Positions 25,468 through 60,460 of a stretch of 64,000 bases of DNA are shown piece by piece. How positions within the stretch are numbered: the first letter of the stretch is position 1; the number at the start of each line of letters is the position of its first letter. The position numbers were made by a program, and so were the translations under genes. The stretch comes from Octopus sinensis (Eukaryota). The stretch is from NCBI RefSeq assembly GCF_006345805.1, contig NC_043007.1, forward strand, positions 31,868,001 through 31,932,000, written 5' to 3'. Below the pieces are notes generated by a model. The model had not been told where the DNA came from and searched no databases. It saw nothing but the letters and a program-made list of their open reading frames with translations.

Positions 25468-25540
25468 TCACCATTTGTAGTTAAACTTCAATCTAAGCAA
25501 ATATTTGATTTTCACTTGAGCAACATCGTACACGATATAT
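25468..25540 (-). CDS. PARP1: PARP1 terminal coding exon
   Basis: (E)[23 protein letters not shown]. Confidence 0.97.
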
Positions 25541-27854
25541 CTAGTGATGTGGTTAAGGTGAAATGGCGTAAAAATTGTTGAAATACAAAGTTATAACAGA
25601 AAGCAGAGATAAAAATACATACTGTATCTGATGGCATAAAAGACACACGGGTATTTTAGACACATCTTAATTCCAACGGCACATATTCAAGGGAAAACGG
25701 TTTTAGAGCATTAAAGCTTATGGGAGGCCCAACTTTGCATATGAGATCCAGGGTAGTTTTTGAAAAGAAAGTGTGTCTTAGATACCATCAAATAGTCATT
25801 TCAAAAAAATATCTATGCTTACATGTATATGTGTACTCTTACAGAATATACAATACATGTTACCCCATGAGTTAAAAACATGTATTATATACAACCAATT
25901 AAATACTTAAGACCCCATGTGCATTGTGTATGTGTGACAGAGAAAGAAGAGAGAGAAAATTATAAAAGTGATAAAGATTGTAAAGTGGCTGATGTTAGAA
26001 AGGGCACCCAGGCACAGAAAACATGCTGGAGCAGACAACAGAGCCCTAGCATAGCGCTCTGGCTTGCCAGCTCCTGCCAAACCGTCCAACCCATACCAGC
26101 ATGGAAAACAGATGTTGAATGATGAGGACGATGATGATGATGATGATAGGTTAACCAAAAGACAATATTATTTAAGAAAAACTTTGAGCAATTAGATGAA
26201 GGATACTCATTGTACAAAAGACTTGAGTTGTCGATATCCGAGGGAACGCCTTTGCCCATTGGGATTTCAACACCATCAAATGTCTGTCGACCGCTAGGAT
26301 CCGGAACTGTCCTACCACAGCCTGCAAAAGAAAGTGCAGAAACAATTGAGTGAGTGTGCAGACATGTGAGTGGGGTGAAAGTATAAGTACATGAATGAGT
26401 GAGCATTTGAGCTCCATTTAACCACACGTCTGCAATTTGTGTCTTAGCTATGTCTCTTTTTTCAGCAGCTGTTTCATAAATTGGTTAACATTCAAAGGCG
26501 TTGGAGAGCATAGAAATTATTGTTGTTGAGAAAAGGTTAACTGATATGGAGGACTGGAAGCCATCTGAATATTTGAAAAGAGTTACCTCTATCAGGACAA
26601 TTTGCTTCGGGTATCAAAATGTTGACATCACAACAGTTGCCCATTGCACTGTGAACACAGTAAAGACTGTAAAATGTAACATGGACAGCTGCAACAGAGA
26701 CTACAAGGCCATGAGCAACAGGTCTTTGGGTATGTCTCCAGTGAAGGTGATGTCATACCACCCAACATCTTTGAACAGGGTCTTAGGCTCAACTCAGAAG
26801 GATGTGTGAAGCTGCTCGAGACTGTAGTCAATCCCTGGCTGGGGAAGGTTGCTGCTGGAAGACCATATGTGGCAGCAGGATTTGGCTCCTTGTCATACCT
26901 CCAGAAAGAGTCAGAAGTGGTTGTCGGAGAATTTTTATGACTTCAACAGCTCCAATTTCAGGCCTCCAGATTCCTCTGGCCATAATCCCATGGATTACTA
27001 CATGTGAGTCACAATTGAGAAAGACACCAACAGCTCTGTCTGTAACATCAAAGCCGAGCTGGTGGCCAAGACCATCAAAGAACTTCCAAGGGACACAGTG
27101 AGGAACACATGCACCAGGTTCTGGAGTCATCTTGAGGTCGTGGTGGAAGCTGAGGTCAACTACTTGAGGAAGCTGTGTAATCTCCCAACTACAATTTAGT
27201 TGACATTTTTTTGAATCTTTAAAATGATTTTATTTTTCAGTGAGATATTGTATTTTCTTATCCTTTTTATGCAAACTGTAGGCAAATGTAGACACACCTT
27301 TCCCCAGAATGAGATAATTTGGCAGAGCTGAGTGGACAGTTCAGTCTGTTTTGGTACCAGAAGCAAACACATAAATGCTTACACATGCAGGGGAGAGTGG
27401 GGTGGGGGCGGGGCATTGCATTTATTAATTGAGCCCAATCAACATAAACACTTCCTCTCTTCTCACAGACAAACACAAAGAGGAAGGATGAAAAAGGGGG
27501 GAGGGGGGAAAAGAAGGAGAGAAACATTAAAATGCCTAATGACAAATAAGCCAGCATTGAAACAGCAATGCCAAAACATCTCAGACCCCCTTTTTCTAGG
27601 GAGCACATTGCAATGTAATAGTAATACATTTAATGATTCTACCAAACAAGTCAGTCATTTAAGAAATATTTTAATGAAACTTAGCAACACAGGCGTAGGA
27701 GTGGCTGTGTGGTAAGTAGCTTGCTTATGAACCACATGGTTCCGGGTTCAGTCCCACAGCGTGGTTCCTTAGGCAAGTGTCTTCTACTATAGCCTCAAGC
27801 CGACCAAAGCCTTGTGAGTGGATTTGGTAGGCGAAAACTGAAAGAAGCCCATCG

Positions 27855-27897
<43 letters not shown>

Positions 27898-30800
27898 CTG
27901 TGTTTGTCCCACCCAACATCGCATGACAACCGATGCTGGTGTGTTTACGTCCCCGTAACTTAGCGGTACGGCAAAATAGACTGATAGAATAAGTACTAGG
28001 CTTACAAAGAATAAGTTCTGGGGTCGATTTGCTTGACTAAAGGCGGTGCTCCAGCATGGCCACAGTCAAATGACTGAAACAAGTAAATAGTAAAAGAGCA
28101 ACATGTATCCATAGAAGTTGATTTGCTAAAGTGTGATATATAACAATAATTTATGTTTATTTTGGGTTTACAAAGATACTGTACTCAACAACAGAAGGAA
28201 AATGTGACAGGTGTGCTACAATAATTGTCCAGCAAAAATACTTGTGCAGAAAGTCTTACCTTTAGTGCTGTGTTTGCCCTTTGGCAAAGATGTTACATAA
28301 TTAGCAGATGTTAGCTCATACCTGCAGCAGAATTGGAAACAAATTTTTTTTTATTATTCAACAACAGACCATTGTTCTAAAATTTGTACAAATTGTTAAA
28401 GCAATTATTTTTATATCAACTCAGCAAAAAAAAAAAAAAACGTTTTGACTCAAGAGCCAGGCCATGTTTTGCAATACCTCTTGTCTAGAAATTTGTAATG
28501 CCATATGTACAGAAGCATCTCTAAAAGTATTCTAAGTAAATAAATAAAATGACACCCCAGTTTTCTTTTCTTCTACAAAGATACAAAAAGTAACTTTTCA
28601 ATTAATTCAATATGCAAGCACTAAATTTAAAAAAAAAGACATTTCAAGGTATAACACTGTATTACGTGTCTGTATTACCGAATTTGATGGCATAAAAGAT
28701 CACCAGCATCATCATTCAATGTTGTTTTCCATGCTGGCATGGGTTGGATGTTTTGACAGGAGCTGGAATGACCAAGATCCACATCAGATTCCGCTGTCTA
28801 TTTTGGCATAGTTTCTACAGTTGGATGCCCTTCCTAATGCCAACCACTTTACAGAGTATACTGGAAGCTTTTTACATGGCACCAGTACAAGGGCTTCTTA
28901 TGTGGTACTAGTACCAGTGCATATCAGAGGCACAATAATTTCAGCAGCACATATTCAAGAAAAAAAAAAGCTTTTAGTGCATTAAGGAATGTAATATAGG
29001 CCCAGCTTTCCATGTAGGATCTGGGGTGAATTTTTGAGACACTTTTCTGGTGTCTCAAAAGGTGTCTTTCATGCCATCAAATATATTACATTATCTAAAC
29101 ATTAACCAACATCTGACAATATTAAAAAGAAAAAAAAACTGGCTCTCCCTGGGTTCTGACAAGGGTCCCAGGAACAGCCTGCTCGTGAAATTTATGTGTA
29201 AGTGGCAGAGCACTCTACAAACACGCACACCCTTAATGCAGTTCTCAGGGAGACTTATAGTGACACAGAATGTGACAAGGCTGGCCCTTTGAAAAAAAAA
29301 AGTGTCTTGCTCAAGAACAAAATGGTCACTGGGTATCAAATTCACAATTTAAAGAAAAATCAAAAGTAAACCAAAGTAACCAAAAAATGATAATTTTATC
29401 AAGTTGATCCTAAACATCTTTTAAGAAATAAACAGCTTTGCCATTAATACAACAATCTTATTAGCATGATATAATTTTAAAATAATAATACAATGAAATG
29501 TAAAATATCTCTTACATGCTTCCTAGGGCAACATCACACAGAAGTATCAAACCCACTGGATCATTTTTGCTTGTGTGACAATAGTTTGCACTTTTGGATA
29601 CCATATCAGCAAAGTAAATGCCTTTACCAAACATATAACCAGTCTGAAAGAGAGAAACATCACCATTATTATTATTTAATGTCTGTTTTCCATGTTGGCA
29701 TGGATTGGAGAGTTTAACACTTTCGATACCAACCTAGCTGAAACCGCTCCTGGCCTTGTAATAAAAATGTCTTGTTTCCATAAGTTTTGAATTAAAAATC
29801 TTCCACCAAACCTTAGTCACAATTTATGTTCCTAACACTAGCTTAATGACAACTAAGTTATTTTACTAAATTCTTTGTTATATTTAAAATAATTGAAAGA
29901 AACACACAGCATCTCAGTAGAAATATGGTTAACAAAAGGGATAACAGGATCTAGCAAGCCCCGAGGCTGAGTCAGTTTCCAGTGTCAGCCTTGACATGGT
30001 TTCTGGGGTTGGATACCTCCCTAATGCCAACCACTTTACAGTGTGTGCTAGGTGCTTCTTTTTTTTTCATGCCAATGACGTTAGTGAGGTCACCAAAAAA
30101 GCTCCGTTCAACCAAGTGATGGTGGGGGAATATTTGAAAGAAGTGGGCATAGCTTTATGTCAGGTGTTGAGAATCTGAAGTATGACAGAGGAACAAGCAC
30201 AGGTAGAGGAGATACATGGCTACCCCACATTATACAAGAGTGGGTGGGAGTATCTGGGAAGGTAATGGTATTCAGCTCACTACCTGGAATTGAACTCGGA
30301 ATCTTGGGGTTAGTAGCCTGCGCTCTTAACTACTACTACCCCAAGATCCTGAGTTCAATTCCAGGCAGTGACCTGAATAATAATAACTAGCAGAGATATC
30401 CAGCCTTGCTCAGAATTAAAATGGCATAGATTTTTGTTTTACTTGTTTCAGTCATGTGACTGCAGCCATGCTGGAGCACTGTCGTTGGTCAAAGAAATCA
30501 ACCACAGGCCTATGTCTGTCTGGCAACAGGACTCTGCACCCTGCCACACAAGCAGGTGAACCCAGTCATGGCTGTCAGACAATTTCTAACATCTGGCCAC
30601 CTAACTCCCCAGATTACAACCCCTTTGATTATTATGTGTGGGGTGCAGATGAGCAAAAGACTAACAAAACTCCTTGTAACACCAAAGATGACCCAAAAGT
30701 AAGGATTATGACATCATTCACCATCTTAAACAAGGAAACCATCCAGAAGAGTTGCAGGAGATTCCGAAGTCATTTGGAGGCCATAGTTGAAGCCAATGGT

Positions 30801-33800
30801 AATTTTATTGAATAAATTTACTCTTTAGTATTTCAAGATATTTTTATGTAATTTTGGTAAATATATGTTAAAATGAGATGTCAGTGTTATTTTCATTTTT
30901 GCGTAATTTAGACAACAGTTTATTCACCACACCCTGGATACACACACACACAGACTCATTCCAGTCATGATATATACTGTTGCCTATATATTTTGCTATT
31001 TGCAGTTTTATATTTCCGATAGGGATTAAGCTATGAGATTTGTGAATTTGCAGATTGGTATTGTCTTCCAACAATCACCTGACATCATGGCAGTGGTCTA
31101 CTTACGTTAATAAACAAGTATTTATATTCACTCTATATTACAGACGAAATGTATTTAGGTAACTTACCACTGGTGCTTCTGGGGGTGCTACTCGCAGACC
31201 TTGTGACAAAATACCAGCAAAGTTGGTAACTCGAGAGCCATGCCAAAGCAGTTTATGATTTGCTAATTCTTCAAATGGACGGAAACGTTCCTTTTCTCCA
31301 AGTCGTTCAAGTCTGTATGCCTACAAAACAAGATGAATATTTCCCAATTGCTCGAATGTCAGTTAAATATTAGTTTGAAATTGTGGCACAAGGCCAGCAA
31401 TTTCATGGGAAGGGAGCGAGTCGATTGTATCGACATCCCACCCCAGAGCCTACTGGGTGCTCAACTGGTACTTATTTTATCAACCCCAAAAGAATGAAAG
31501 ACAAAGCTGACCTCCAGCAGCAGATATGTCACTAAGCATTTTCTCTGGCACAGTAACAATTCTGCCAGCTCGCTGGGGTCGTTCAGGTGCAGCAGCCATG
31601 CAGTGTATCTAGGGCAAAGAAAACTTGGTGGAGCCCGTCCCTCTCCAGGCTAAACTCATTTCTACAGCTGAGTAGATCGGAGCAAAGTGAAATGAAGTGG
31701 CTTGCTCAAATGACAAATACACACACCTATGTCCAAACTGTGGAGGCACATGGCCTGGTGTTTAGAGCAGTGGATTCACGGTTGAGGGATCGATCGAGGG
31801 TTCAAATCTCAGACCGGGTGATGTGTGTGTTTATGAGCGAAACACCTAAGCTCCATGCAGCTCCAGCAGAAGGTAATGGCGAACTTCTGCTGACTCTTTC
31901 CTCCTGCATTTAGCAGCTCACCTGGTCCAGGTGGGAAAACTATAAGCCAATGAAACCAGGAAACTGGCCCTTATGAGTCGGGCATGGCTCAAGAAGGAAC
32001 TACCAACATGTCCAAATTAAGTAACTTCCATAATTTGATAGCAAAAAATAATTAAAAACAGAAATTAACTTACGTCAACAACTTCCAGTCCGTACTGGTT
32101 GTGTGTAACTGCATGTGTGTTCTGCACATATTTAGTAATTAGATCAAATTCTTCGGAGGATCTTTCTATGTACTACAATAAACAAAATCAATCAACAATC
32201 AATTAACAAGAAGAATCAATAAATAGACAAATGTTTACTTGTATTCAAAGAAAGAAAATTTTTTTTTTACAAGATCCTTAACTATTTTCTTTGTTACCTT
32301 TTATCTTGTACTTGTTTCAATTATTGGAATATGGCCATGCTGAGGTGCTTTGCTAAATTGCTAAGTTATAGGGACATAAACAAACCAACACCAGTTGTCA
32401 AGAAGTTGGGGGAAAAGATCAAACACCAACATATATATATATAGGTATATGGCAGGCTCCTACAGTTTCCTATTTCTTTACTGCCCACAAGGGGCTAAAC
32501 AAGGACAGACAAATAGATTAAGTTGATTATATCAACCCCAGTGTGCAACTGGTACTTAATTTATCTGCTAAGCATTCCGCCCAGCATGCTAACGTTTCTG
32601 CCAGCTCGTTGCCTTCTACAGTTTCCATCAACCAAATTCACTTACAAGGCATTGGTTGGCCTGAAGTTATAGCAGAAGGCACTTGCCCAGGGTGCAGCAG
32701 ATGCAAATTCATTGTTAACAGAATGGAGTCCATCTTTAAAGTAACGTATGCACCAAGCAGCAAATTGCCAGAGCATGTAAAATTCAACAGAAGACCAACA
32801 CTTGTTAAAAAAAGGTTATCATCACATAGGCCATAATCAGAATTTTAGTATACAATCCCAATGGCATTACAGACAAATACAACTGATGGATACCTAGGTC
32901 TTTAAGGTCCCATAGAGATTTTTTAAATTGCTAAGATTTCACAACAAGAACGCTGATAAGAAAACGCTCCCAAAACCTTCAATGAAATTTCATTTAAATA
33001 TACAAATTCATAAAAATATTGGTGATCTAAACCGTTTTTATAGCTTTATTCTGTGTATAAATAAAAGCCATTTCAAATCAGTTAAAGGTTGTTCATTTTC
33101 TTTTTTCTAATAACTATTCTAGCTTGATATCTAAATATCTTTAGATTGTTTCACACCCATCTCCTTCAGTTGTGCTACAGAGATACAGCCAATGTAGTCC
33201 TATCCTTGCATATGCAATTAGGCATCTATATCATTAACCCATTAGTGCATAGTGTCTAGAAAAATAAACGAAGGAAAAATTACTATTACTTGTTTCATAC
33301 ATGTATATAGTTGGTTTGTTTGTACGCAGTGCCTGCTCACTCATAGAGCACTAGTTTAGAGGCAGACTATACCAAAAATAAGCTCAATAGGTAGTTTACT
33401 TAACAAGCAATAGTAATTTTTCCTGCATACATTTTTCTGGACATTGCGCATTAACAGGTTAAGCATGGCTTTTAGAAAACATCATTCAATTTATTCGCAT
33501 TCCACAAAAATTGACTGTTTTGTTATCTAGTGTATTTCATCATCATCATCGTTTAACGTCCGCTTTCCATGCTAGCATGGGTTGGACGATTTGACTGAGG
33601 GCTGGCGAACCAGATGGATGCACCAGGCTAGAGTTTCTACAGCTGGATGCCCTTCCTAACGTCAACTACTCCGAGAGTGTAGTGGGTGCTTTTATGTGCC
33701 ACCAGCATGAGGGACACTCAGGCAGTACTGACAATGGCCACGCTCAAATGGTGTTTTTTACGTGCCACCTGCACAGAAGCCAGTCAAGCGGCACTGGGAA

Positions 33801-36800
33801 CGACCTCGCTTGATATTTGATAGCGTGAAAGACATACAGGTGTATTAAATAAACCTCATTTCTCAGCACTGCATAGCAAGGAAAAGAAGATTTTAGTGCA
33901 GTGATTTCTCAACTGGGGTCCACATAACTTAAGGGGGTCCATATAAGATTTTGTTGTTAAAAATTTACGAGCAATAAATTGTTTATACTTCTATAATACA
34001 CAAAATGTTTTAACAATTTTTTAATTCCTAATAACATTTAATTATAAAAATATAGAATTTTCTAAACATCAACTGACTAGGAGGGTTCATCCGAGAAAAA
34101 AGTGGGATCAAAGGGGTCCATAGGTAAGAAAATGATTTTGAGAAGGACTGGTTTGTCCCCATTTACCTCAATATCCGTCTTGAGTTTCTGGTAATGAGCA
34201 TCAATTGCATCCATGCGATCGTTTCCATCATCCCCACCTTTCAGTAAATTGTAGGCAACTTCAATTTCCAACAAATTATCCAACATTTCGATTTTTTGCT
34301 GTGTAAAAAAAAAGACAAGAGGTAAATGCATTGATTTCATTTAAGACTCTCACGCTTTGGAAATTCTAGCTTACATAGTGGGTCACCCGTATACAAATAA
34401 TCCTCTGGACAACCAAATTGGATAGCAAACAGTTTTAGCGCTTTCTGTGGCCATGCTGGGGTACCACCTAGAAAAATTTCTAGTCAAATGAATCAGCTCC
34501 AATACTTAGCATTTTTTTTTAAAAACCTGGTACTTATTTTATCAGTCACTTTCGCTGAACTGCTAAGTTGCAGGGATGTAAACACAACAACACCACTTGT
34601 CAAGCAGTGATTGGGGACAAACACAGACACACACACACACAGTAACTGGGAACCTATTCACTTAGTAACCTCAAATTTGAACAACAAACCATCAGTAGAC
34701 TACACACACGTTAAGTAGCTGAGAGGAAAGCAGATACAAATGGGACAGCAATACATACATTTTATAGCAAACAGTTTTTCTGAAGGAATCTATATTCAGC
34801 TAACAAGCTGAAAGTTGAGTAACAGACTACAAATAGATTAAACACACACACACATGAGTGGCTGGGAGACCATGTATAGATGGTTCACTAATGTCTGTGT
34901 ACATATTTTATTTAACTTGCAGTTGCTCTTATTCTATAGAGTGAATAATATTCCTCTTATGTTTTGCTAAAATTATAAGCTTAGATCTACAGAAGAAAAC
35001 AAAAGGAAAGCATGTGTATGCATACACACACACACACACACACACACATATTTTTATGTATTGTGATCCCTGTGATGGTGGCACGTAAAAAGCACCATCC
35101 GAACATGGCCGATGCCAGCTTCTGTGCCGGTGGCATGTAAAAAGCACCAACCGATTGTAGCTGTTGCCAGCCTCCCCTGGCACCTGTGCTGGTGGCATGT
35201 AAAATGCACCATCCAAACATGGCCGATGCCAGCGCCGCTTTGACTGGTGTCCGTGACAGTGGCACGTAAAAAGCACCCACTACACTCTCGGAGTGGTTGG
35301 CATTAGGAAGGGCATCCAGCTGTAGAAACATTGCCAGATCAGACTGGAGCCTGGTGCAGCCTCCTGGCTTCCCAGACCCCAGTCAAACCGTCCAACCCAT
35401 GCTAGCATGGAAAATGGACGTTAAACAACAATGATGATGATGATGATGATGAATGGACAAATAAAGCCTCTTTTCGTGTCTGTGTGGAGTCTGAGTGTGA
35501 CCAGGACCAGATTCCCCATTTCTATGAACTTCAGTTACTCATGGAACGAACAATTTGGTTAAAGAAATAAGATTCCAGAATGGATCCTATTCCTATATAG
35601 AGATTCCACTCCATGTATTAACCCTTTAGTGTTCAGATTACTCTGTTAAACGTAATACTTTTTCACTCAAATTATTTTGAATTAATCATGCATTATCTTA
35701 TAGCTTTGAAGTTTCAATGATGTGAATGTTTATTTTTAGAATGTCAATGTAGGTTAGGTGTGAGAGGCTAGATATGGCCAGTTTGAATATAAAACATGTA
35801 GAATATATTGGGCCGGATTTGGCCGGTTTAATCACTAAAGGGTTAAATAAACATAGAAAAAAAATGTTCTGTAAAACAATATATAAAAGTGAGGCATAAA
35901 ATGCTTCAAATTGTTATTACCTTAATTATTTCAATTGTGTCCAATAGAGGGGGTTTGTTCAAACCAAAGTCATGAGGTATTAAAGTGTAAAAACGGTTGG
36001 AAGCATCCGAAAACAAGGATACGGAACTTTTCTTATCAACCAACTGAAAAATAAAAAGAATAGAATTAATTTTGTTTCATCACAGAACAGATGAAGAATA
36101 GAATGTGAAGAAAACATCTTTATCTTGGTGGCCGGTGGCATGTAAAAAGCACCATCCGATCGTGGCCGTTTGCCAGCCTCGCCTGGCACGTAAAAAGCAC
36201 CCACTACACTCATGGAGTGGTTGGCGTTAGGAAGGGCATCCAGCCACAGAAACATTGCCAGATCAGACTGGGCCTGGTGCAGCCTTCTGGCTTCCCAGAC
36301 CCCAGTTGCACCGTCCAACCCATGCCAGCATGGAAAGCAGACGCTAAATGATGATGATGATGATCGGAAAGTTTGACAGGAGCAGACAATTCAGAAAACT
36401 TCACAGGGTCCCAATGTCCGCTTTGATATGGTTTCTATGCCAACCACTTTACAGAGCATACTCGGAGCTTTTTAAGTGGCACTGGCACCAACAAGGTTGC
36501 TAAATAACTTGCAAGACCAGACCCCTCCACTGAAGCAAGTAGGACTATTGAAGGGGGTGACTCTGAGCCAGGACAACGGCATCAAATGTTTTTCCATCAC
36601 ATCTTCTATTTGAAAACTGTCCTCAAAAATAGTCTCCAAACCCATCAGGTAAGCTACATTAATTCAGAATGACTTTATCAATAGAACAGGTGATGATATT
36701 CTGTATTTCTCTTAATATAATCTAGTTTTAATATTAGCTCAAAATCCGAGAGGTTAAATTGTTAACCTTTTCATTCAGATGTATACACTATGTCCCCTGG

Positions 36801-39800
36801 GAGTAAAAGTTTACTCGGGGCAGTGGGTTATATAACACTGTAAAAATGACAGAAACTATTGGTTTCAAATTTTGGTACAAGGCCAGCAATTTCAGTGGAT
36901 GGGGTAAGTGGATTACATCAACCCCAGTATTCAACTGGTACTTATTTTATCAACCCTGAAAGGATAAAAGGCAAAGTTGACCTCAGCAGAATTTGAACTC
37001 AGAACATAAAGATGGACAAAATGCCGTTAAGCACTTTTCCCAGTGTGCTAACAAGTCTGCCAGCTTGCCGCCTTAATAACACAGAAAATATTTTAAAACT
37101 TTTATTTAGCATTTGATTTAAGCAATCCCATTAAAAAGATGCAGCACGGAATTTTCTCAGTGAAGAGGTCGCGGTCTCAAAGCGATGAAAATATTTTGAC
37201 AAATTAAATTTAAATGTTGAAGTGAATCTAACGGTTTTTGTGTGTTTTTAAATGGCTTATAAACACCTTCCACGCTGCAATTGCTTTCGTTCCACAGCAC
37301 ATGATCTCAAATCAGGTCACTTGCTATGCAAGTACATCTCCGTAATTTATTAATATCTATTAGAGAGAAAATAATTCAGTCTGACTCCTGCAATAATGGA
37401 AAAGTAGACATTCTACGAAGATGATGATGAAGAATATATCAAAAACATACAAACCTCTGTAAGTTCATTCAGTACTTTGTAAGCAGATTCTATTTGCTTT
37501 TTAGACAATTTCCCAAGAGGCATTTTTTTCAAATCAATCTAAAATAAATTTTAAAATCCAAGAATCAGTTACTTCAGAAAATGAATAACACTTTCTATAA
37601 AAAATATTCCAATATTTCTCTTTTCTTTCTAATTTCCTAAAGTTGCTGTTGATAATAATATTCTATTAGATTTGCAAGAATTGGAATTTCACTGATTTTA
37701 AGACAACCTTTTAGCATTCACATCAGTCTGTCAGAATAAAATGGCTTATTTATTCACAATGTTTTGAATTAATCAATCATGATCTTGTAGTTTCAAGATT
37801 TTTAAGAGGTGGTTGTATATTTTTAGAATGACAATGTAAGATGTGAGGCTAGATTAAGCTGGTAAGAACATAAAAACAGGTCAAATATTTTTGGACAGAT
37901 ATGACCAGGTGAAATGCTGAAGGGTTATAATATCTTTCGTGTGCCCAGGGAGATGGAAATATGGAGCGATTAAAGCTAAGCTTTCAGGAGGGGGAAAATA
38001 AAAAAACAACAGTTTGTAGATTTCCAAATAGAGAATTGTGTCTGAAGGAAATAAGTGGAAGGAAAAACAAATTCAGTTTTTAGATTACTGAGAAAGTTCT
38101 GCTTAGTTTTCCCCCTAATTCATTCTAGACATTGGTCAGCAAATCATTTCTCCAGTAATCCTGGTTTACAGCAGAATCTCCAGCATCTTCCCAAATTAGT
38201 TAACCTCCAGAAATAACGAATCAGAGTATGAAGAACGTTAAAGACATTCATACAAGCCTTACGTAAATCATGAAATCTAGTGAGAGAGAGATGATGGACA
38301 AAATTAACCTCAACTAGGAAAAGACTAAATAAATATTGAAGACATCTAAATTCCAAAGTGCTGATCTGTTTACAGTTTGACTACAATAAATGTTAAGAAC
38401 AATCTCTGCTGCTCAGTAAGAGTGTAAAAACTGCAACCTTCTGCTAAGCCATGTCATGCATGTGTGGCAGAATAGGCTCATCAAACCAGTTTGATCCCAA
38501 ACTCAAATTCAAAGCCTCCACATCAGAACATGGTTGGTGGAGAAATCAGACTGAGGCCTTCGTCCCGCAGTGGACTCAACACAGGTAATCCTATCCAATT
38601 GCAAGAACAATTCTATCATTATCTAACACTCCATACTTAGATGAAAATCTTCAACAGATTCTTTACTTACCTCAAACTCCATCATCGCCCTTTTCATGCT
38701 TTCAATATCAAAAATCATACAAATAAGATCTTGAATGGATTTGTGTAATGTGGAAGTGCTTTTGCTCAAGTCCAATTTCTTTATATTATCATCATCCTGA
38801 AAAGTAAACAACAAATAAACAATAAGTAAAACAATTCCTGGTATTAAACCAACTTATCACAAAGACACAATTTTCAAGGTGGTTGATGCCAGTACCACCT
38901 GACTGGCTCCCATACTGGTGGCATATAAACAGCACCATTCGAGCGTGGTTGATGCCAGTACTGCCAGACTGGCTCCCATGCCGGTGGCACGTAAAAAGCA
39001 TCATTCGAGTGTGGTTGATGCCAGTAACTGCCAGACTGGCTCCCATGCCGGTGGCACGTAAAAAGCACCATTCGAGTGTGGTTGATGCCAGTAACTGCCA
39101 GACTGGCTCCCATGCCGGTGGCACGTAAAAAGCACTATTCCGGCGTGGTCGATGCCAGTACCACCTGACTGGCTCCCATACCGGTGGCACGTAAAAAGCA
39201 CTATTCCAGCGTGGTCGATGCCAGTACCACCTGACTGGCTCCCATACCGGTGGCACGTAAAAAGCACTATTCCAGCGTGGTCAATGCCAGTACCACCTGA
39301 CTGGCTCCCATACCGGTGGCATGTAAAAAGCATTCAAGCGTGGTCGATGCTTGTACCACCCAACTGGTGGCACATAAAAAGCACCATTCGAGCGTGGTTG
39401 ATGCCAGTACCGCCTGACTGGTTCCCATACTGGTGGCACATAAACCGCACCATTCGAACGTGGTTAATGCCAGTACCACCTGACTGGCTCCTATACTAGC
39501 ATTGTCGATGCTAGTACCACCTGACTGGCATCAACCGTCAGTGGTGGTTAGGGCATTGTGCACACAATCACAAAATTATGGTTTCAATTCCAGGACCAGC
39601 TGATAATTCAGTTCATGTAGCCTCAGTCCACACACTTGCAAATGAGTGGTGTCTAATTCAAGAGGATTGTTGCGATCTTGGTCCATTTATACATCATGGG
39701 AACTGGGAAACCAGCCTTATGAGGTCCGTGAGGGGGTGGATTTGACAATGTGATGTGACGACGACAATGATAACAACGACGAAATTCTAATTGAAATATC

Positions 39801-42800
39801 AGCCAAGTTAATTAAATAGACAAAAAAAAAATGCAAATCAAACTTTAAAAACAAGAGAAAAAATATTTTACCTGTCCATAGTCTATATCTAGAGGATAAA
39901 ATTTATTGGGAAACTTCTGGAAATTATGCCTTTCCCACCAATGATTGTTGGTTTTCTTGAAATACAAGTCTTTAAATTCCTGGATGGCCGCAGCGCGGTA
40001 ACTAAATGATTCTTTTTTGTTATTCCCAATTGTTGTGCCAACACGGCCCCACGACCGAAAAACCCACCAACTGAAAAATAGCCAAAGAATACATTTTGTT
40101 AAGTAAAAATAATAACAGAAAGGAAGTTTTAGAGTCAGCTCCTACATAGCTGTGGATCTTAAGATCATGGTTTCAATTCCTAGACCAGGCAGTAGGTTGA
40201 ATTCTTGGACAAAACACTTCCTTTTACATTACTCAACAATCACTGACCCTTATTCATTCACATTGATTTGAATTAATCGTGTATTAGATAGAGACGCAAG
40301 TAAAATTAATAATAAAGAAACGAAAATAAAACTTTGGAAACAGCAACACCACCATAACTTATATGGAAACCATGAGCATGCTTTCAGGGGAGATAATCAG
40401 AGAAAGACTTGAAAGTCAACATAAGACTATAACACTTCATGTAAAGTAAATATAGCAAATAATCCAGAATCCTTGTCCAGTACCAGATCAATCCCCAAAT
40501 CTAATCAGTTCTTGCCAGTCACGAGGTCAAACATTCCTGAAAGTTTCATCTGAATCCATCCAGCAGTTCTTGAGATATCTTGTCCACGGACAAAAAAACA
40601 AACACAACTGAAAACAATACCTCTGCCTTTGCTAAGGTGGAAGTAATGTTTCATTTGACAGAGTAATCTTGCTAAAGGGTTAAAGATTGCGTAAAACCAG
40701 AAAGAACAGAATTTAATTTTTGGGGGTGGTAAAATGTAGCCAGCGCCGCCCGACTGGCCTCCGTGCCGGTGGCACGTAAAAAGCACCATCCGGCCGTGGC
40801 CGTTGCCAGCTTCGTCTGGTCCCCGTGCCGGTGGCACATAAAAAGCAGCATCCAATCGTCTGGCACGTAAAAAGCACCCACTACACTCACGGAGTGGTTG
40901 GCGTTAGGAAGGGCATCCAGCTGTAGAAACACTGCCAGATCAGACTGGGCCTGGTGCAGCCTTCTGGCTTCCCAGACCCCAGTTTGAACCGCCCAACCCA
41001 TGCCAGCATGGAAAGTGGACGTTAAATGATGATGATGATTATGATGATTTAACTTGTACAAACTTTATACAAAGTGATCACAAAATTTGATGATGTTTGA
41101 CCAAAAATTTGAATTCTTTTCACCTTTGAATTAAATAACACCTGAAATTCATTAATTAATAATTTCATTTAAATTAAAAATGATCTGACTTACCCGCTTT
41201 TTTTATCAGATTCCAAGGCTTGGAGTTTGTAGTAAGAATTAGTTCCAGAAGTAACATCCACTAAGCCTAGTACAGCGTTATAAATATCTCCACCATCTTC
41301 TATAACATGAGCAGTTTTTGCCAGTTCTGGTAAGAAAAACAAATTAAATGTAACAAATTACACCAAAATATTTAAATGAATAATTACTAAATTAACTAAT
41401 TATTTTTTTTAAAACCATCTCCTTTTAACTAATTAATTTTATAATCATTTCCTTATGCTGAAGCAAATAGAAACTGGGAACTTTCTTTGTGATTATTATT
41501 CCATGCTGGAATAAACTGGCGGGGGTTTTTTTTTTGGTTTGTTTTATCCATTAGCAAAATATTCCACGTTGTTTTATGTTGGAACCAGCCAGATCAGGCC
41601 TCTTACACCAACCCTCCAATGATATTCTACAAATAAATAGTTACTGCATCAACATCTCAAAGCTACAAGATAATGCATGATAAATTCAAAACAAAATGAA
41701 TAAATTAACATTACAGTTGATGGAGTAATCGGAATGCTAAAGGGTTGATGCTTAGATATGTTGTTCAATACTAAACAATCAAATGTGACAGTTCAATAAC
41801 CAATCAAATGCAACAGTTTAATAAACTAACCAATCAAATGTGACAGTTTAATAACTAACCAATCAAATGTGACAGTTTAATAACTAACCAATCAAATGCA
41901 CAGTTTAATAACTAAACAATCAAATGTGACAGTTTAATAACCAATCAAATGCGACAGTCTAATAATCAATCAAATAATGTGAGTTTAAATTGATCAAATG
42001 TGACAGTTTACTACTAACTGATCAAATGTGAGTGAAGGAACATGGCTAAGTGGTCAGGGTGTTGCACTCACGATCACTAGGCCATGGATTCAATTCCTAG
42101 ACCAGGAAGTGTGTTTTGCTCTTGGGCAAAACACTTCATTTCATGCTGCTCCAGCCCAATCAGCTTTAAATGAGTAACCCTGCAAAGGACTAGCATCCCA
42201 TCCAGTGGGAATGTTGAGATTCCAGTCATTTATATGAAATAAAAACTGGGTAACTGATCCTAAGAGCACTATGACTCGAGACAATTATGTCCAGGGACTG
42301 ATGCAAATGGATCAACTGTGACAATCTTCAGTTAGGTTAAAGAAATCACAAGTACTAATGAAGTGTATATCTGTTTCTTTATTACCCACAAGGGGCTAAA
42401 CATAGAGGGGACAAACGGATTAAGTCGATTACATCAATCCCAGTGCATAACTGGTACTTAATTTATCGACCCCGAAAGGATGAAAGGCAAAGTCGACCTC
42501 GGCGGAATTTGAACTCAAAACATAACGCCAGACAAAATACGGCTATGCATTTCGCCTGGCGTGCTAACATTTCTGCCAGCTCACCTAATGAAGCATATAC
42601 CTGATAGCCAAAATTAAGACAGTCTCACAGTGGCTTTGAGAATATCTTTCTAATAATATATTCAATATAAAATGAAAATCCAACAAAATTAACAGAAATG
42701 AAAATCTAGCCCCTTAGTCATACTAGCAGACATTTCTGTCTCCTGGAATTTACACCTGTCTTCTGTAATTAATTCATCTTGGAGAGAATAGTCTCCAAGA

Positions 42801-45800
42801 GATAGCAGCAATTTCTTATGTTCCTCACTTGAAACAAAAACTAAAAATTTCAGAAAAGAACTTCCATACTTGAGTCTGGATCAACAGCAGCTCCTCCTTT
42901 CACCATCATCTTCAACTTATCTGGGATGCTTTTCGTAAAATGTGTATCTACAGAGAAATAAAATAGCAGTTTTAATTAAAAAGTTTAAGTTATAAAATAG
43001 GAATGTGAAGTTTATGTTATGGTAGCTGAAAGAAATATAAACGACTTTATTTTATCTATTCTTTTTTTTTCTTCTTTGACTTGTTTCAGTCATTTGACTG
43101 CAGCCATGCTGGAGCACCACCTTTAAGGGTTTTAGTCGAAGAAATCAAACCTAGGACTTATTCTTTGGAATCCTAGTACTGATTCTTATTGGTAGCAATA
43201 GTGGAGGGACAAACACAGACATATACACATATGTGTGTGTGTGTGTATATATATATAGCACATGAAAAACAACATTTGAGCAGTCGTTATCAGTGCTGCT
43301 GGACTGGCTCCTGTGCAGGTAGCACGTAAAAAACACCTTTTGAGCATGGTCATTGCCAGAACCGCCTGACTGGCCCTTGTGCCGGTGGCATGTAAAAGCA
43401 CCCACTACACTCTTGGAGTGGTTGGCTTTAGGAAGGGCATTCAGCTGTAGAAACTTTGCCAGATCAAATTGGAGCCTGGTGCAGCCTTCTGGCTCACCAG
43501 TCCTCAGTCAAACAGCATGGAAAGCGGACATTAAACAACAATGATGACATACATGCATATATCAGGTTTCTTTCGGTTTCCATCTATGAAATCCACTCAC
43601 ATGGCTTTGGTCAGCTTGAGGATATAGTAGAAGACACTTGCCCAAGGTGCCCCGCAATGAGACTGAACCTAGAACCTTGTGGATGAGAAGCAAGCTTCTT
43701 ACCACACAACCACAAGAAAGATAAATTTGTTTCAGTCACTGTAATAATTACTTTTAATTAAATACTTATCATAAATGCCATTTCACCTATCAAAGAAAGC
43801 TATTAAATCTAATAAAATATTTGAAACCAAGCAGAATAATGCCTCCTTACATAAAAACAATGTATTCAACCCAACCTGACCCTTTTTAGGCTAAATTCTA
43901 CAAATTTAACCATTGAGCTCCTTACATAGTAAACTGACAGTTTTCAACTTGCTTCATATTATAAGTAAATAGATGAAACAAATAATCTAGTGCTCTTAGC
44001 TTAGATTTTCCATGGGGCTGGCCAGATTGGAGCAGTCTCGAGTATAACCAGCCGAAACTGCGAAGATGATCTGGAACTCAACTGAGGAAAGACAGGCTTG
44101 CAAATTTTCAGTATTAGTTTTTACCATTAGATGGGATTCTTACTTTCAAACAGAATGGTCAGGAAGCTTGCTTCTCTACCACACAACTATGCCTACATTG
44201 GCGGGTCTATAATGGCATCAAAGTCCCAAAGAGATTCAAACAAATATGAAACTCATATCAAATCAAAATTACCATTTCTAGGATTGCTAGCTCCACTTTT
44301 AGAAACGTATGGCACAATTATTCTTTTTTGTGGCTGTAAAAAATTTAAGACAATAAAGAAAGAAAAGATAAGTTGATATAGCAAAAAAAAGAATGGACAG
44401 AGTCAAAACTATTGAAAAGGTTGCAAGACGCAACGAAAATTTTAGGACAATAAAAATAAGAAAAACGTGGAAATTTTACCGGTGAGGGTGTTAAATATTA
44501 AGGCACAAAAAGAAAATGACTCTCCCCAGACACAATAGCAAAAAAAAAAGTTGATATAGAAAAGATAAGTTGATATAGCAAGAATTTTAAAGGATTATGT
44601 AGTTCTGTCAGATAATACTCATCAAAATATCTAAAGAAGATATAAAATTATAATTGAAACAACAGACAATCAAATTGAATAATTTATGCAAAATCTTCAA
44701 ATTAGAGAAAAATATTTATGAAATCTTACATCGTCTCCCCATGGAGCCAAATTGTGTTTCTGGATCATTAAAAGTACTCCTCCTTTCTTCACATCCTCAA
44801 GAAATGCTGTACTCACAACATGGACTCCAGCTTTTTTGGCAGCTTTTATTTGCTTATTTGGTTTAGTTATCGACTCTGTGAAAGGAGCAAAGAAAAAAAC
44901 ATGACTCAAATATGAAGACCAGATTACGTCACATAGCATGCAGTTAATATTTATGGAATATGAAAATTAAAACAAAAAGGATAAAGCATCTGTAGTGTGA
45001 CATGTTAGCACTATTTTGTTGTGGCAGCATAGCACAGCCATGCTTTGCTCATTTCATCCATTAACTGCTGTCTGCGGAAGGACACATGTGGCAACTTCCA
45101 GCAAAAAGTAAAACCTAGTCTTTTCAAGCATTTCGAGAGAGTTGCTGTTGACGTATTAACATGACTGTCACAAGCCGTCCAGTGATTATTAGCACATGTA
45201 ACAACATGTTGACATTTATTTTATACACCACACATCTTGCAACTCAAGGATTCACAACTCATTTAACCTTGGCAGCATGCTAACCAGAGAGGATATTATG
45301 CCTTAGTTAAGTTTGTCTAACTCACCTGGCCATCTCCCTACACCTGAAAGTACATATTCATTTTACACATTATTTTTTGTTCAAACATTCACATACATAC
45401 TGCCACTCATACAAGCGTGTCCTCTCCTTAAACCTTTAGCATTTAAACCGGCCATATCTGGCCAAAAGTATTCTGCCTGGTTTATGTTCAAATTGGCCAG
45501 ATCTGGTCTCTCACACCAACCCTACAATATCGTTTTAAAAATTAACAGCTACCTCATCAAAATCTCAAAGCTGCAAGATAATGCCTGATTAGTTCAAGGC
45601 AATGTGGATGAAAAAGGATTAATTTTGGCAGAATAATGCGAACTTCATACATTCGCCTTCTGATCTGATTTTCTTTCATCACTCATTCAATGAACCTTGC
45701 TACCAGTCACTACAATATAAACCTCACTGAATTTACTCAACATTGTCACAATGGTTGGGTGGAAGTTGCCACATGTATCCTTCCATAGACAACAGTAAAT

Positions 45801-48800
45801 GGATGAAATGTGCAAAGTAGGACTATTCCAAGAAAAGACTATCAACACAGCCACTTCAAAATTACAAATTACAAAGTAATTATTTGCCTCTTCTGAACAA
45901 TTTCAATTACAAGATCTTTCATGTGAGAAATATGAAAATTAATGACATAACGAAACAGCCTACCTTTATTGCTAATGCAAGCAGCTAAGTTCTTATCGAT
46001 TGTGGTCACAATTTGACCTCCCATATTACTTATGTTCTGAGTAATCTGTTCTTCTGAAAAATCTAGGTTTCCAACAATAGCAAACTTCAATCCTTTCAAT
46101 GGTTTCGATGGCCTGGCAACAGAAGATAAACAGAAAATTTTGATTTTTGTAGACATTAAAAAAAAATAATTTCATTTTTGTATATATTTAACATTCATTT
46201 TCAATTCTATTACAGATGTCTCTTTAATTTTGACATTTGCAGGAAGTATAAATGTTAGTTAGTTAATTATTTGGCTCAAAAAGTAAAAAGCAAGGCCATG
46301 TAGGGGGACATGGAGTTATGTACAGGGAGGGTGTTCATGCAAAGAGTTCAGGCCACTTGTGGTCAAGTGAGACTTTGAACCGAGCGGTCGTCGGCATCTT
46401 CACTATCTCGTCCGGCAGCATATTCCACGGATCCACAACCCAGACGGAGAAAGCCCTTCTCCTTCGATTGAGATGAAATCGTCGCAGATAGAGCTTTATA
46501 TATAAATGAAATTTTATAACTAGATTCCCTTTTTTGACACTACTCACACAACTTCGAACTGAGTCACTGTAACATCTTCATTGCAACATCCACTTCTTCA
46601 GGCTTTATATAGGTCAGTTAGATTTTCTACAGCCAGATATATTACCTTACTTGAAAACTGAAGGTTGGTGACAGGAAGTGGTTCAGTTCCTTTCGAGTGT
46701 TGGGCCTCATGGAGGCAACGACCAAGATCTTTGGCATATATGAAGACACCTCAAACTAAGTAGAATTGTTGTCATCCATACATAGAGGCTTGTCGTTTAC
46801 AGGTGCCGATGCCACATAAAATACACTTGTGCTGCTGCTGCTGCAAAAACACGTTCATACAAGTGGCAGGTAAAAAGCACCCAGTGCACTCTTAAGTGGT
46901 TGGCATTAGGGAGAGCATCCAGCTGTAGAAACCATGCCACAATAGGCAGTTGGAGTTTAGACAGCTCCTGTCAAACCATCCAACCCATGCCAGCATGGAA
47001 AACAAACGTTAAGCAGTGATGATGATGATGATGCTGTGTGCTTGTGTATGACGGATTTAAGCTTTAAGTTATAACTTTGAAATAGGTAAACAAAAGCCAG
47101 TCTATAATTTACTTTACAAAAAGACATATTTCACATTATTTTACGATTGCTAGAATTTTTTTTTCTGTTACATTTAGAGATGTTGGTTTTATAGATACAA
47201 AGAATTAAATTATAATTTTGTAAAACTGCAAACAAAAATACCCCCCCACACACACACTGCATATACTAAAGAAAGAAGATCAAACAAAAAAAAAAATATC
47301 CAGAGATACTTACAGTCCATCCAGGACATCCACGGAACTTACAGGACCTTCCTTTGAAGATGCAGTTTCAGCAGCAAACACACGATCTCGCTTCTTGTAT
47401 TTATATTTCTTCCTGAAAGAAATAGTTTTCTTTTAAAAAAAATCCAAATGTGAATTTACATTTCTAGGCAAAATCACAGCTGTATGGTTAAGATGCTCGT
47501 TTTGCAACCAAACGGTTTTAAGGTTCAGTCCCACTACATGGCACCTTAGGCAAGTATTTTCTACTAAAGACCCAGACCAACCAAATGCTTTGCAAGTGAA
47601 TTTAATTTGGTAGAGGGAAACTGCATATGTATGTGTGTGTATTCCCTGTCCATCTTTGTATCATCTCTCTGTCCGAATGCTTTATCGTCATCTGTTGTGT
47701 TCTTGTTCCATTTTTTTTATTTATATATATATATAGCAGCGTATGTACACTCTTGCCTACCTTATGTGAGTATGTGTGTGTGTGTGTATGATGTATATAT
47801 ATATACACCACAACACACACACACACACACAGGTGTCTCTGTGGTGACTTGTACTACTATAAATAGCAGCCAAATCTCTCTTAAAACACACCTTTTTATC
47901 AAAAGATGGAAGATTTACAGTATTTCAAAAGGAATAGAAAAAACTATGCAACGGGTATGCTACATCAGAGGCAACTTTGGGCTAAACAAAACACAGACAA
48001 ACACATACTTCACATTAAAAGATTACCTCTAAATAATACCAATAAAGTTGACAGTATCTCTTCAAAATTTCATTCCCTGGTATTTTAAACATTTTCTCAC
48101 TGAGCTCTGAGACATAAAAAATTAACCGAGTTGCCTCCCTTAGCTAAAGGCCTCAGAATTGTGCAACCCAACCTCATTTTTTAGTGGTGCATTTTTAATA
48201 GACCCCAAAAAGATGGAAGGCAAAGTCCACTTCAGCAGGATCCATACACAGAATTCAAAGCCAAAAGAAATGATGCTAAGCATTTTGTCTGGCACTATAA
48301 CAATTCTGCTTGCTCACTACTTTTTATACTAAATAATAATAATAATAATAATGAAAATGATGATGATGAAGATGAGGATTTCAAAGTTTGGCACGAGGCC
48401 AGGAATTTCGAGGAAGGAGGTAAGTTGATTGCATTGACCCCCCCAACGCTCAACTGGTATTTATTTTATCAACCCCAAAAGGATGAGAAGCAAAGTCAAC
48501 CATGGCAGTATTTGAACGCAAAAGGAGATGGCAATTTTGAGAAGGACTGAGGGAGCAATGGTGAGAGAAATGTGTAGGGTGAAGCTGTTTGATAAGAGGA
48601 GGACTGAGGACTTGAAGGGAATTCTGGGGTTGGAGGAATCGATGGAATGGTTGGCAAGGGCGGATGGAGTGAGGTGGTATGGGCGTGTGTGGAGGACAGA
48701 TGAAGAGCATGTTCTGAAGAGGGTGATTGTATTTGAGGTAAATGGAGGGCAAAAGCAAAGTAGAACGGAGAAAAGGTGGAGGCAGAGATTGGGAGGGTTG

Positions 48801-60429: not shown

Positions 60430-60460
60430 CTGAAAAGAGAAAAAAAGTGATATTGTCAAA

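What the first reader, a model, noticed from the sequence alone, without database searches (positions are those of the whole stretch)
25541..26206. Minor-spliceosome (U12) intron splits the catalytic Glu codon of PARP1
Seen: donor GA|GTATCCTTC, branch CCTTAAC at 25552-25558, no pyrimidine tract. The codon for the E988-equivalent is GA|A across this intron. The other 24 PARP1 introns in the window are U2-like. Established: these are the U12 consensus signals, and E988 is required for PAR chain elongation. As I recall, the human orthologous last intron is also minor-class (not verified here). Inference: U12 splicing efficiency gates production of active PARP1, and the intron has survived despite two TE insertions in its 666 bp.
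Basis: partly seen in the sequence, partly recalled or inferred. Interest (0 to 1): 0.7.

Follow-up and report, generated by a model that had tools for sequence, protein, structure and literature searches.

The report
Conserved U12 intron in octopus PARP1
The last intron of the octopus PARP1 DNA-repair gene is a genuine minor-spliceosome (U12-type) intron, but it is the octopus copy of an intron already known in human and mouse PARP1 and conserved across animal phyla, so it is ordinary.

Summary
The window is Octopus sinensis PARP1 on the minus strand. Its last intron (26206 to 25541, 666 nt, phase 2) splits the Glu968 codon (equivalent to rat and human E988) as GA|A. It begins GTATCCTT and has ACCTTAAC with the branch A 12 nt from the AG.

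Of the 25 introns in the window, only this one has these signals, and the combination occurs once in 128 kb of two-strand sequence. The genome encodes U11, U12, U4atac and U6atac with intact recognition boxes. Two dispersed-repeat inserts in the intron are real.

The same intron (same codon, same phase, same donor octamer) is present in abalone, oyster, chiton, Lingula, an annelid, medaka and rat. It has been precisely lost in zebra mussel.

The literature already lists PARP1 as a minor-intron gene whose last intron is the U12 one. Loss of Rnpc3 or Rnu11 in mouse raises its retention. Octopus minor introns have also been surveyed genome-wide.

The "gating" idea is the generic molecular-switch model and is untested in octopus. 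The split Glu codon has no special role, because a retained intron still reads GAG (Glu); what is lost is the 23-residue C-terminus. Verdict: real, well supported and already known.

The parts
25471..60432 (-). PARP1 coding region present in the window (aa 40-991; 26 coding exons, 25 complete introns). The exon for aa 1-39 lies upstream of the window.
   Evidence: Exact match to O. sinensis PARP1 P0121.
26207..26321 (-). Penultimate coding exon (115 nt), ending ...CTT TTG TAC AAT GA.
25541..26206 (-). U12-type GT-AG intron: 666 nt, phase 2, the last intron of PARP1.
26199..26206 (-). Minor-class 5' splice site GTATCCTT, with no mismatch to the consensus.
   Evidence: It has the strongest predicted pairing of all 25 donors to octopus U11 (-7.0 kcal/mol) and U6atac (-5.1), and weak pairing to U1 (-4.5).
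25552..25559 (-). Branch-point sequence ACCTTAAC (1 mismatch to TCCTTAAC), with the branch A 12 nt from the 3' splice site.
   Evidence: The published optimum distance is 11-13 nt (PMC8199999).
25541..25542 (-). 3' splice site AG.
25471..25540 (-). Last coding exon: the third base of the Glu968 codon, then [23 protein letters not shown] and the TGA stop at 25473-25471.
   Evidence: It aligns with the ordered C-terminus of human PARP1 catalytic-domain structures.
25979..26147 (.). Repeat A: one complete ~168-bp SINE-like dispersed element (intron positions ~60-228), with a trinucleotide tail (ATG)n at 26119-26147.
   Evidence: About 20 partial or full matches in the window; at least 40 scored genomic copies at 77-86% identity; the same ends in about a dozen copies; tandem repeat. 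ARAGORN finds no tRNA-like part.
25609..25794 (.). Repeat B: a fragment of a second dispersed repeat family (intron positions ~413-598). The ends are approximate.
   Evidence: At least 40 scored genomic copies at 72-84% identity, with ragged ends.
25960..25962 (-). First in-frame stop if the intron is retained. Read-through gives E-Y plus 80 unrelated residues in place of the native 23-residue C-terminus.

Best explanation
This is a genuine, ancient U12-type (minor-class) GT-AG intron. It is the octopus orthologue of the known minor intron that is the last intron of vertebrate PARP1.

Inferred mechanism, from the established pathway: the U11/U12 di-snRNP recognises GTATCCTT and ACCTTAAC together. 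U6atac then replaces U11 at the donor, and U4atac/U6atac.U5 complete the spliceosome for catalysis. Removal joins GA to A, restoring Glu968 and attaching the last 23 residues of the catalytic domain.

The intron was inherited from at least the protostome-deuterostome ancestor. Its place inside the catalytic Glu codon is a historical accident, not a device. Only the roughly 60 nt at each end carry function, which is why two repeat insertions in the middle were tolerated.

Correct minor splicing is needed for a full-length enzyme, as for any minor-intron gene. A specific regulatory gate is not shown.
For: - Signals: exact GTATCCTT donor and ACCTTAAC 12 nt from the AG, unique among the 25 introns and unique as a pair in the window.
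- Donor pairing: best of the 25 donors to the genome's own U11 and U6atac, poor to U1.
- Machinery: U12 (126.6 bits), U11 (94.5), U6atac (96.9) and U4atac (83.8) genes are present in the same genome above Rfam cut-offs. They carry GUAAGGAA, AAAAGGG and AAGGAGAGA boxes.
- Orthology: same codon, phase 2 and identical donor octamer GTATCCTT, with a TCCTTAAC-like motif 11-16 nt from the 3' splice site, in Haliotis, Crassostrea, Liolophura, Lingula, Owenia, Oryzias and Rattus. Intron interiors are unalignable.
- Literature: the PARP1 last intron is a minor intron (PMC9459249). Its retention rises on Rnpc3 or Rnu11 loss in mouse (PMC6239176, PMC12332006, bioRxiv 10.1101/182816).
- Annotation: the spliced product equals the annotated O. 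sinensis protein. Transcript contigs from another cephalopod read straight across the junction.
- Repeats: the inserts spare intron positions 1-59 and 599-666.
Against: - No octopus RNA data were examined, so use of the minor spliceosome in this species is inferred from sequence and orthology.
- A formal classifier (intronIC) was not run.
- The branch site has an A where the consensus has T at its first position.
- My simple U12-branch-site duplex energy did not discriminate this intron from pyrimidine-rich U2 introns.
- The pyrimidine content upstream of the acceptor is not lower than in the other introns.
Confidence: 0.93

Rival explanations
1. Regulatory gate. The intron is kept at this site by selection because slow or U6atac-limited minor splicing sets how much catalytically competent PARP1 is made, with retention acting as an off state.
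For: - Minor introns are reported to be spliced more slowly and to act as U6atac-dependent switches in mammalian cells (PMC8199999, citing Younis 2013).
- Mouse Parp1 minor-intron retention rises when the minor spliceosome is impaired (PMC6239176, PMC12332006, bioRxiv 10.1101/182816).
- The intron has been kept across distant animal phyla.
- Retention would remove the conserved C-terminus.
Against: - Dependence on the minor spliceosome is not the same as regulation.
- Zebra mussel lost the intron cleanly while keeping the neighbouring introns.
- Retained-intron frames are not conserved (3-82 codons).
- The Glu codon survives retention as GAG, so the codon split adds nothing.
- A pan-eukaryotic survey argues that neutral processes explain much of minor-intron evolution (PMC10639083).
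- No octopus expression data exist here.
Confidence: 0.2
2. A U2-type intron that resembles U12 signals by chance and is spliced by the major spliceosome.
For: - The termini are GT-AG.
- The pyrimidine fraction near the acceptor (0.68) is ordinary for this gene.
- U1 pairing energy (-4.5) is no worse than for a few weak U2 donors in the same gene.
Against: - The joint chance is about 1e-5 for 25 introns (counts).
- The donor has 3 mismatches to GTAAGT, including C at +5, the most of the 25 introns.
- The identical octamer and branch motif are conserved in eight species.
- The orthologue is experimentally minor-spliceosome dependent in mouse (PMC6239176).
Confidence: 0.02

Closest known systems
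Human and mouse PARP1 last intron (U12-type, GT-AG)
   Same: - Same gene and same codon (LLYNE|Y, GA| split), in phase 2.
- Same GTATCCTT donor and a TCCTT(A/G)AC branch motif.
- It is the last intron of the gene.
- Rat locus; literature PMC9459249, PMC12332006, PMC6239176.
   Different: - The octopus intron is 666 nt, against 249 nt in rat.
- It carries two lineage-specific repeat inserts.
- The branch A is 12 nt from the 3' splice site, against 16 nt in rat and medaka.
- The third codon base after splicing is A (GAA), against G in rat.
- There is no experimental splicing data for octopus.
U12-type (minor-class) introns in general, as catalogued by U12DB, MIDB, IAOD and intronIC
   Same: - Donor and branch consensus, a short branch-to-acceptor distance and no long pyrimidine run.
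- A single minor intron among many major ones.
- A non-zero phase, in line with the reported bias of minor introns away from phase 0 (PMC10639083).
- Deep positional conservation.
   Different: Nothing qualitative. O. sinensis was already included in a genome-wide minor-intron survey (PMC10639083). Most mollusc orthologues of human minor introns are reported as minor-type (PMC11347168).
Minor introns as 'molecular switches' (U6atac/p38MAPK model, Younis et al. 2013, as reviewed in PMC8199999)
   Same: A single minor intron could limit output of the whole mRNA. The octopus genome has U6atac genes.
   Different: - The model was established in mammalian cells.
- Nothing here tests U6atac turnover or stress-dependent splicing in octopus.
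- Intron loss in zebra mussel shows that the arrangement is not obligatory.

Membership tests
U12-type (minor-class) spliceosomal intron | 5' splice site matching [A/G]TATCCTT directly at the exon-intron boundary. | tested here: met
   GTATCCTT has 0 mismatches. The other 24 introns have 2-5 mismatches.
U12-type (minor-class) spliceosomal intron | Branch-point sequence close to TCCTTAAC. | tested here: met
   ACCTTAAC has 1 mismatch, at the first position. It is complementary to GUAAGG of the octopus U12, with the branch A bulged (read by eye).
U12-type (minor-class) spliceosomal intron | Short branch-point to 3' splice site distance (10-20 nt, optimum 11-13; PMC8199999). | tested here: met
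   12 nt here and 11-16 nt in seven orthologues.
U12-type (minor-class) spliceosomal intron | No polypyrimidine tract upstream of the acceptor. | tested here: inconclusive
   The longest pyrimidine run is 5 and CACATCACT lies between the branch site and the AG. But the pyrimidine fraction of 0.68 is within the range of the U2 introns, and several of those also have short runs.
U12-type (minor-class) spliceosomal intron | The host genome has the minor spliceosome (U11, U12, U4atac, U6atac). | tested here: met
   All four are found above Rfam gathering scores in G000, and their recognition boxes are intact.
U12-type (minor-class) spliceosomal intron | Donor pairs with U11 and U6atac rather than U1. 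| tested here: met
   Of the 25 donors it has the best duplex energy to U11 (-7.0) and U6atac (-5.1); to U1 it scores -4.5, against -5 to -12.7 for most of the others.
U12-type (minor-class) spliceosomal intron | Splicing depends on minor snRNPs. | not testable with these tools
   Shown for the mouse orthologue only (PMC6239176, PMC12332006, bioRxiv 10.1101/182816).
U12-type (minor-class) spliceosomal intron | Called U12 by a trained classifier (intronIC or the MIDB position weight matrices). | not tested
Orthologue of the vertebrate PARP1 minor intron | Same position and phase in an orthologous gene. | tested here: met
   Phase 2 in the codon aligned to E988, in rat, medaka and six protostomes including the octopus.

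The most novel reading that the evidence does not exclude
Because this is the last intron, a retained-intron PARP1 mRNA would have no exon junction downstream of its stop codon. It might therefore escape junction-dependent decay and be translated. The product would keep the DNA-binding domains and the H-Y-E residues but have a scrambled C-terminus. Cells could then use minor-spliceosome activity (for example U6atac level under stress) to switch between active PARP1 and a DNA-binding, catalytically crippled, dominant-negative form. Selection for that switch would explain why the intron has stayed U12-type across distant animal phyla.
Probability: 0.05. Interest if true: 0.6.

Novelty: already known. 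Interest (0 to 1): 0.15.

Why it matters
The main value is as a clean positive control. A reader working from sequence alone correctly recognised a minor-class intron, and the tools confirm it at every level: signals, the genome's own snRNAs, orthology and the literature.

Biologically it adds little. It documents that the PARP1 minor intron dates back at least to the protostome-deuterostome ancestor, tolerates repeat insertions in its interior, and can be lost outright in one bivalve.

It does not open a new question. PARP1 is a textbook minor-intron gene, and octopus minor introns have already been catalogued genome-wide.

Tried and rejected
- Duplex energy between the U12 box and the 3' region of each intron was not discriminating, because pyrimidine tracts pair with AAGGAAAA (one U2 intron scores -13.7 against -5.4 here). 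I rely on motif plus distance instead.
- The Ixodes gene model is truncated before the last exons, so it is uninformative.
- The Branchiostoma and Pecten proteins are not on record in the contig index.
- No supplementary tables are held for PMC11347168, so the per-species class of the PARP1 intron could not be read.
- Rfam finds nothing in the window itself. ARAGORN finds no tRNA-like part in repeat A, so 'SINE-like' rests on size, copy number, fixed ends and the simple-repeat tail only.
- The other GTATCCTT and ATATCCTT octamers in the window have no suitably placed branch site and acceptor within 10 kb. The one at 36022 lies inside a coding exon.
- The cephalopod transcript contigs show an uninterrupted junction, but they come from another, unidentified species whose gene structure I could not see. 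They are weak evidence.
It was replaced by database proteins for every conclusion.

Full report
**What is at the coordinates**

The feature lies on the minus strand.
- The upstream exon ends ...CTT TTG TAC AAT GA.
- The intron begins GTATCCTTCATC at 26206 and ends ...TTTCACCTTAACCACATCACTAG at 25541, 666 nt in all.
- The next exon begins ATATATCGTG.
- Joined, the two exons read ...LLYNE|[23 protein letters not shown] followed by a stop.

**Which gene and organism**

- A draft translation found a 991-aa PARP1 from Octopus vulgaris at 100% identity over the searched region.
- The 90% cluster also holds the O. sinensis and O. bimaculoides proteins.
- An exact spliced mapping gives 26 coding exons and 25 complete introns in the window, covering aa 40-991. 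The exon for aa 1-39 lies upstream of the window.
- The model is identical to O. sinensis PARP1 (P0121) and differs from the O. vulgaris protein by one residue.
- The catalytic triad maps to H842, Y876 and E968, which align to rat H862, Y896 and E988.
- The last 200 residues align end to end with human PARP1 catalytic-domain structures at E = 4e-98, including LLYNEYIVYD and the residues encoded by the last exon.

**Is it a U12-type intron?**

I scored all 25 introns in the same way.
- Only this intron matches GTATCCTT without a mismatch; the others have 2-5 mismatches.
- Only this intron combines that donor with a near-consensus branch site (ACCTTAAC) whose branch A is 12 nt from the acceptor. 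The published optimum is 11-13 nt (PMC8199999).
- In the two strands of the window, GTATCCTT occurs at 5 of 7152 GT sites and CCTTAAC 7 times. The pair in the right arrangement occurs once, at this junction.
- By my arithmetic that is about 1e-5 by chance for 25 introns.
- The remaining GTATCCTT and ATATCCTT octamers have no matching 3' signals, and one lies inside a coding exon.
- The 'no pyrimidine tract' point is weak. The longest pyrimidine run is 5, but overall pyrimidine content near the acceptor is ordinary for this gene.

**Does the genome have the machinery?**

- U12 (126.6 bits), U11 (94.5), U6atac (96.9) and U4atac (83.8) are all found in the same assembly above Rfam gathering scores.
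- Their sequences keep the known recognition elements: U12 ...AUGAGUAAGGAAAAU..., the U11 5' end UAAAAGGGUC, and U6atac ...AAAAAAGGAGAGA....
- I compared all 25 donors against these snRNAs and the genome's own U1. This donor has the strongest predicted duplex to U11 (-7.0 kcal/mol) and U6atac (-5.1), and a weak one to U1 (-4.5).
- The equivalent energy test for U12 and the branch site did not discriminate, because pyrimidine tracts pair with the purine-rich U12 box.

**Orthologues**

I fetched PARP1 loci from other animals and located the intron at the LLYNE|Y(F) codon.
- Haliotis, Crassostrea, Liolophura, Lingula, Owenia, Oryzias and Rattus all have an intron in the same codon and in phase 2.
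- All begin GA|GTATCCTT and have a TCCTTAAC-like motif. The branch A is 11 nt from the acceptor in these protostomes (12 nt in octopus) and 16 nt in the two vertebrates.
- Lengths range from 112 to 1124 nt, and the interiors share no detectable similarity.
- Dreissena has no intron there: TACAATGAGTTCATC is contiguous, while the upstream introns remain. That is a precise loss.
- The intron is therefore at least as old as the protostome-deuterostome ancestor, and it is dispensable in one lineage.

**What is already known**

- PMC9459249 states that PARP1 is a minor-intron gene whose last intron is the minor one, with a conserved TCCTTAAC.
- PMC12332006 lists a mouse Parp1_U12_intron primer ending ...CTGTATAATGA, the same exon end as here.
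- Retention of that intron rises on Rnpc3 loss (PMC6239176, PMC12332006) and on Rnu11 loss (bioRxiv 10.1101/182816).
- O. sinensis was one of the species in a pan-eukaryotic minor-intron survey, which notes relative enrichment in molluscs (PMC10639083).
- Most mollusc orthologues of human minor introns are reported as minor-type (PMC11347168).
- The finding is therefore an expected conserved instance.

**The repeat inserts**

- Intron positions ~60-228 (window 25979-26147) are one complete ~168-bp SINE-like unit.
  - It has about 20 partial or full matches in the window.
  - At least 40 genomic copies were scored at 77-86% identity.
  - About a dozen copies share the same ends.
  - It carries an (ATG)n tail.
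- Positions ~413-598 (window ~25609-25794) belong to a second dispersed family, with at least 40 scored copies at 72-84% identity and ragged ends.
- Both inserts spare the first 59 and last 68 nt of the intron, which is where the splice signals lie.

**The 'gating' interpretation**

- If the intron is retained, the frame reads GAG TAT, which is Glu-Tyr. This holds in all eight species, because the consensus GTATCC dictates it. The catalytic Glu is not what splicing supplies.
- What retention removes is the native 23-residue C-terminus. In octopus it is replaced by 81 unrelated residues up to a stop at 25962-25960.
- Read-through lengths in the other species range from 3 to 45 codons, with no conservation beyond E-Y-P. 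A selected retention isoform is therefore unlikely.
- Correct minor splicing is necessary for a full-length enzyme. That holds for any minor-intron gene.
- A regulated gate is the generic molecular-switch model (PMC8199999) and is untested here. The Dreissena loss and the neutral-evolution argument of PMC10639083 weigh against a special role.

**Verdict**

The classification as U12-type is well supported (0.93). The functional interpretation is only partly supported. The feature is already known in kind and by orthology, and interest is low.

Noticed in passing
L034 (Dreissena polymorpha PARP1), around locus positions 80401-80455: The orthologous U12 intron has been precisely lost in zebra mussel: the coding sequence TACAATGAGTTCATC is contiguous, while the upstream introns remain. 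Oyster and chiton keep the intron.
   Followed up: yes
G000 genome-wide, e.g. L009, L010, L011: U6atac gives 43 matches above the Rfam gathering score (39-97 bits) scattered over many chromosomes. U12 gives 4 (3 above the cut-off), U11 gives 5 and U4atac gives 2 (1 above the cut-off). This suggests many U6atac gene copies or retro-pseudogenes in octopus.
   Followed up: no
G000:C15, about 28.98-29.18 Mb: About 20 near-identical U1 snRNA genes (around 133 bits each) cluster within about 200 kb on both strands, forming a U1 gene array.
   Followed up: no
window 60409-60432 (-): There is a very short PARP1 coding exon of 21-24 nt encoding (Q)SPVFDGK of zinc finger 1, flanked by ...ctcttttCAG and GTAAGT. 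The exact acceptor is ambiguous between 60432 and 60429, because the upstream exon lies outside the window.
   Followed up: partly
window 1961-2554 (+): An open frame matches reverse transcriptase (Pfam RVT_1, E = 5.8e-13). It is probably a retroelement remnant downstream of PARP1.
   Followed up: partly
window 6821-7351 (-): An open frame contains a LIN52 match (Pfam PF10044, E = 1.8e-6). It is probably an exon of a neighbouring LIN52-like gene on the same strand as PARP1.
   Followed up: no
window, e.g. 35292-35452, 13253-13408, 40893-41048, 36216-36364, 21999-22144: The SINE-like repeat A of the U12 intron has about 20 full or partial matches across the 64-kb window, several of them inside other PARP1 introns.
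   Followed up: partly
window 25960-26208 (-): The retained-intron reading frame stays open for 81 codons and includes a His run (HHHHHRPHH) encoded by the CAT-repeat tail of repeat A. The long open frame looks accidental, since the orthologues have 3-47 codons.
   Followed up: yes
window 52134-52018 (-), aa 236: The window encodes Lys where the O. vulgaris protein (P0001) has Asn. The window matches O. sinensis (P0121) exactly, which identifies the source species.
   Followed up: yes
L043-L045 (Logan runs SRR25158150, SRR25158146, SRR25097171): Three 2.8-kb transcript-like contigs from an unidentified cephalopod encode a 763-aa PARP1 that is 76% identical to the octopus protein and lacks the N-terminal zinc fingers. 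The sequence is uninterrupted across the LLYNE|Y junction (GAG codon).
   Followed up: partly
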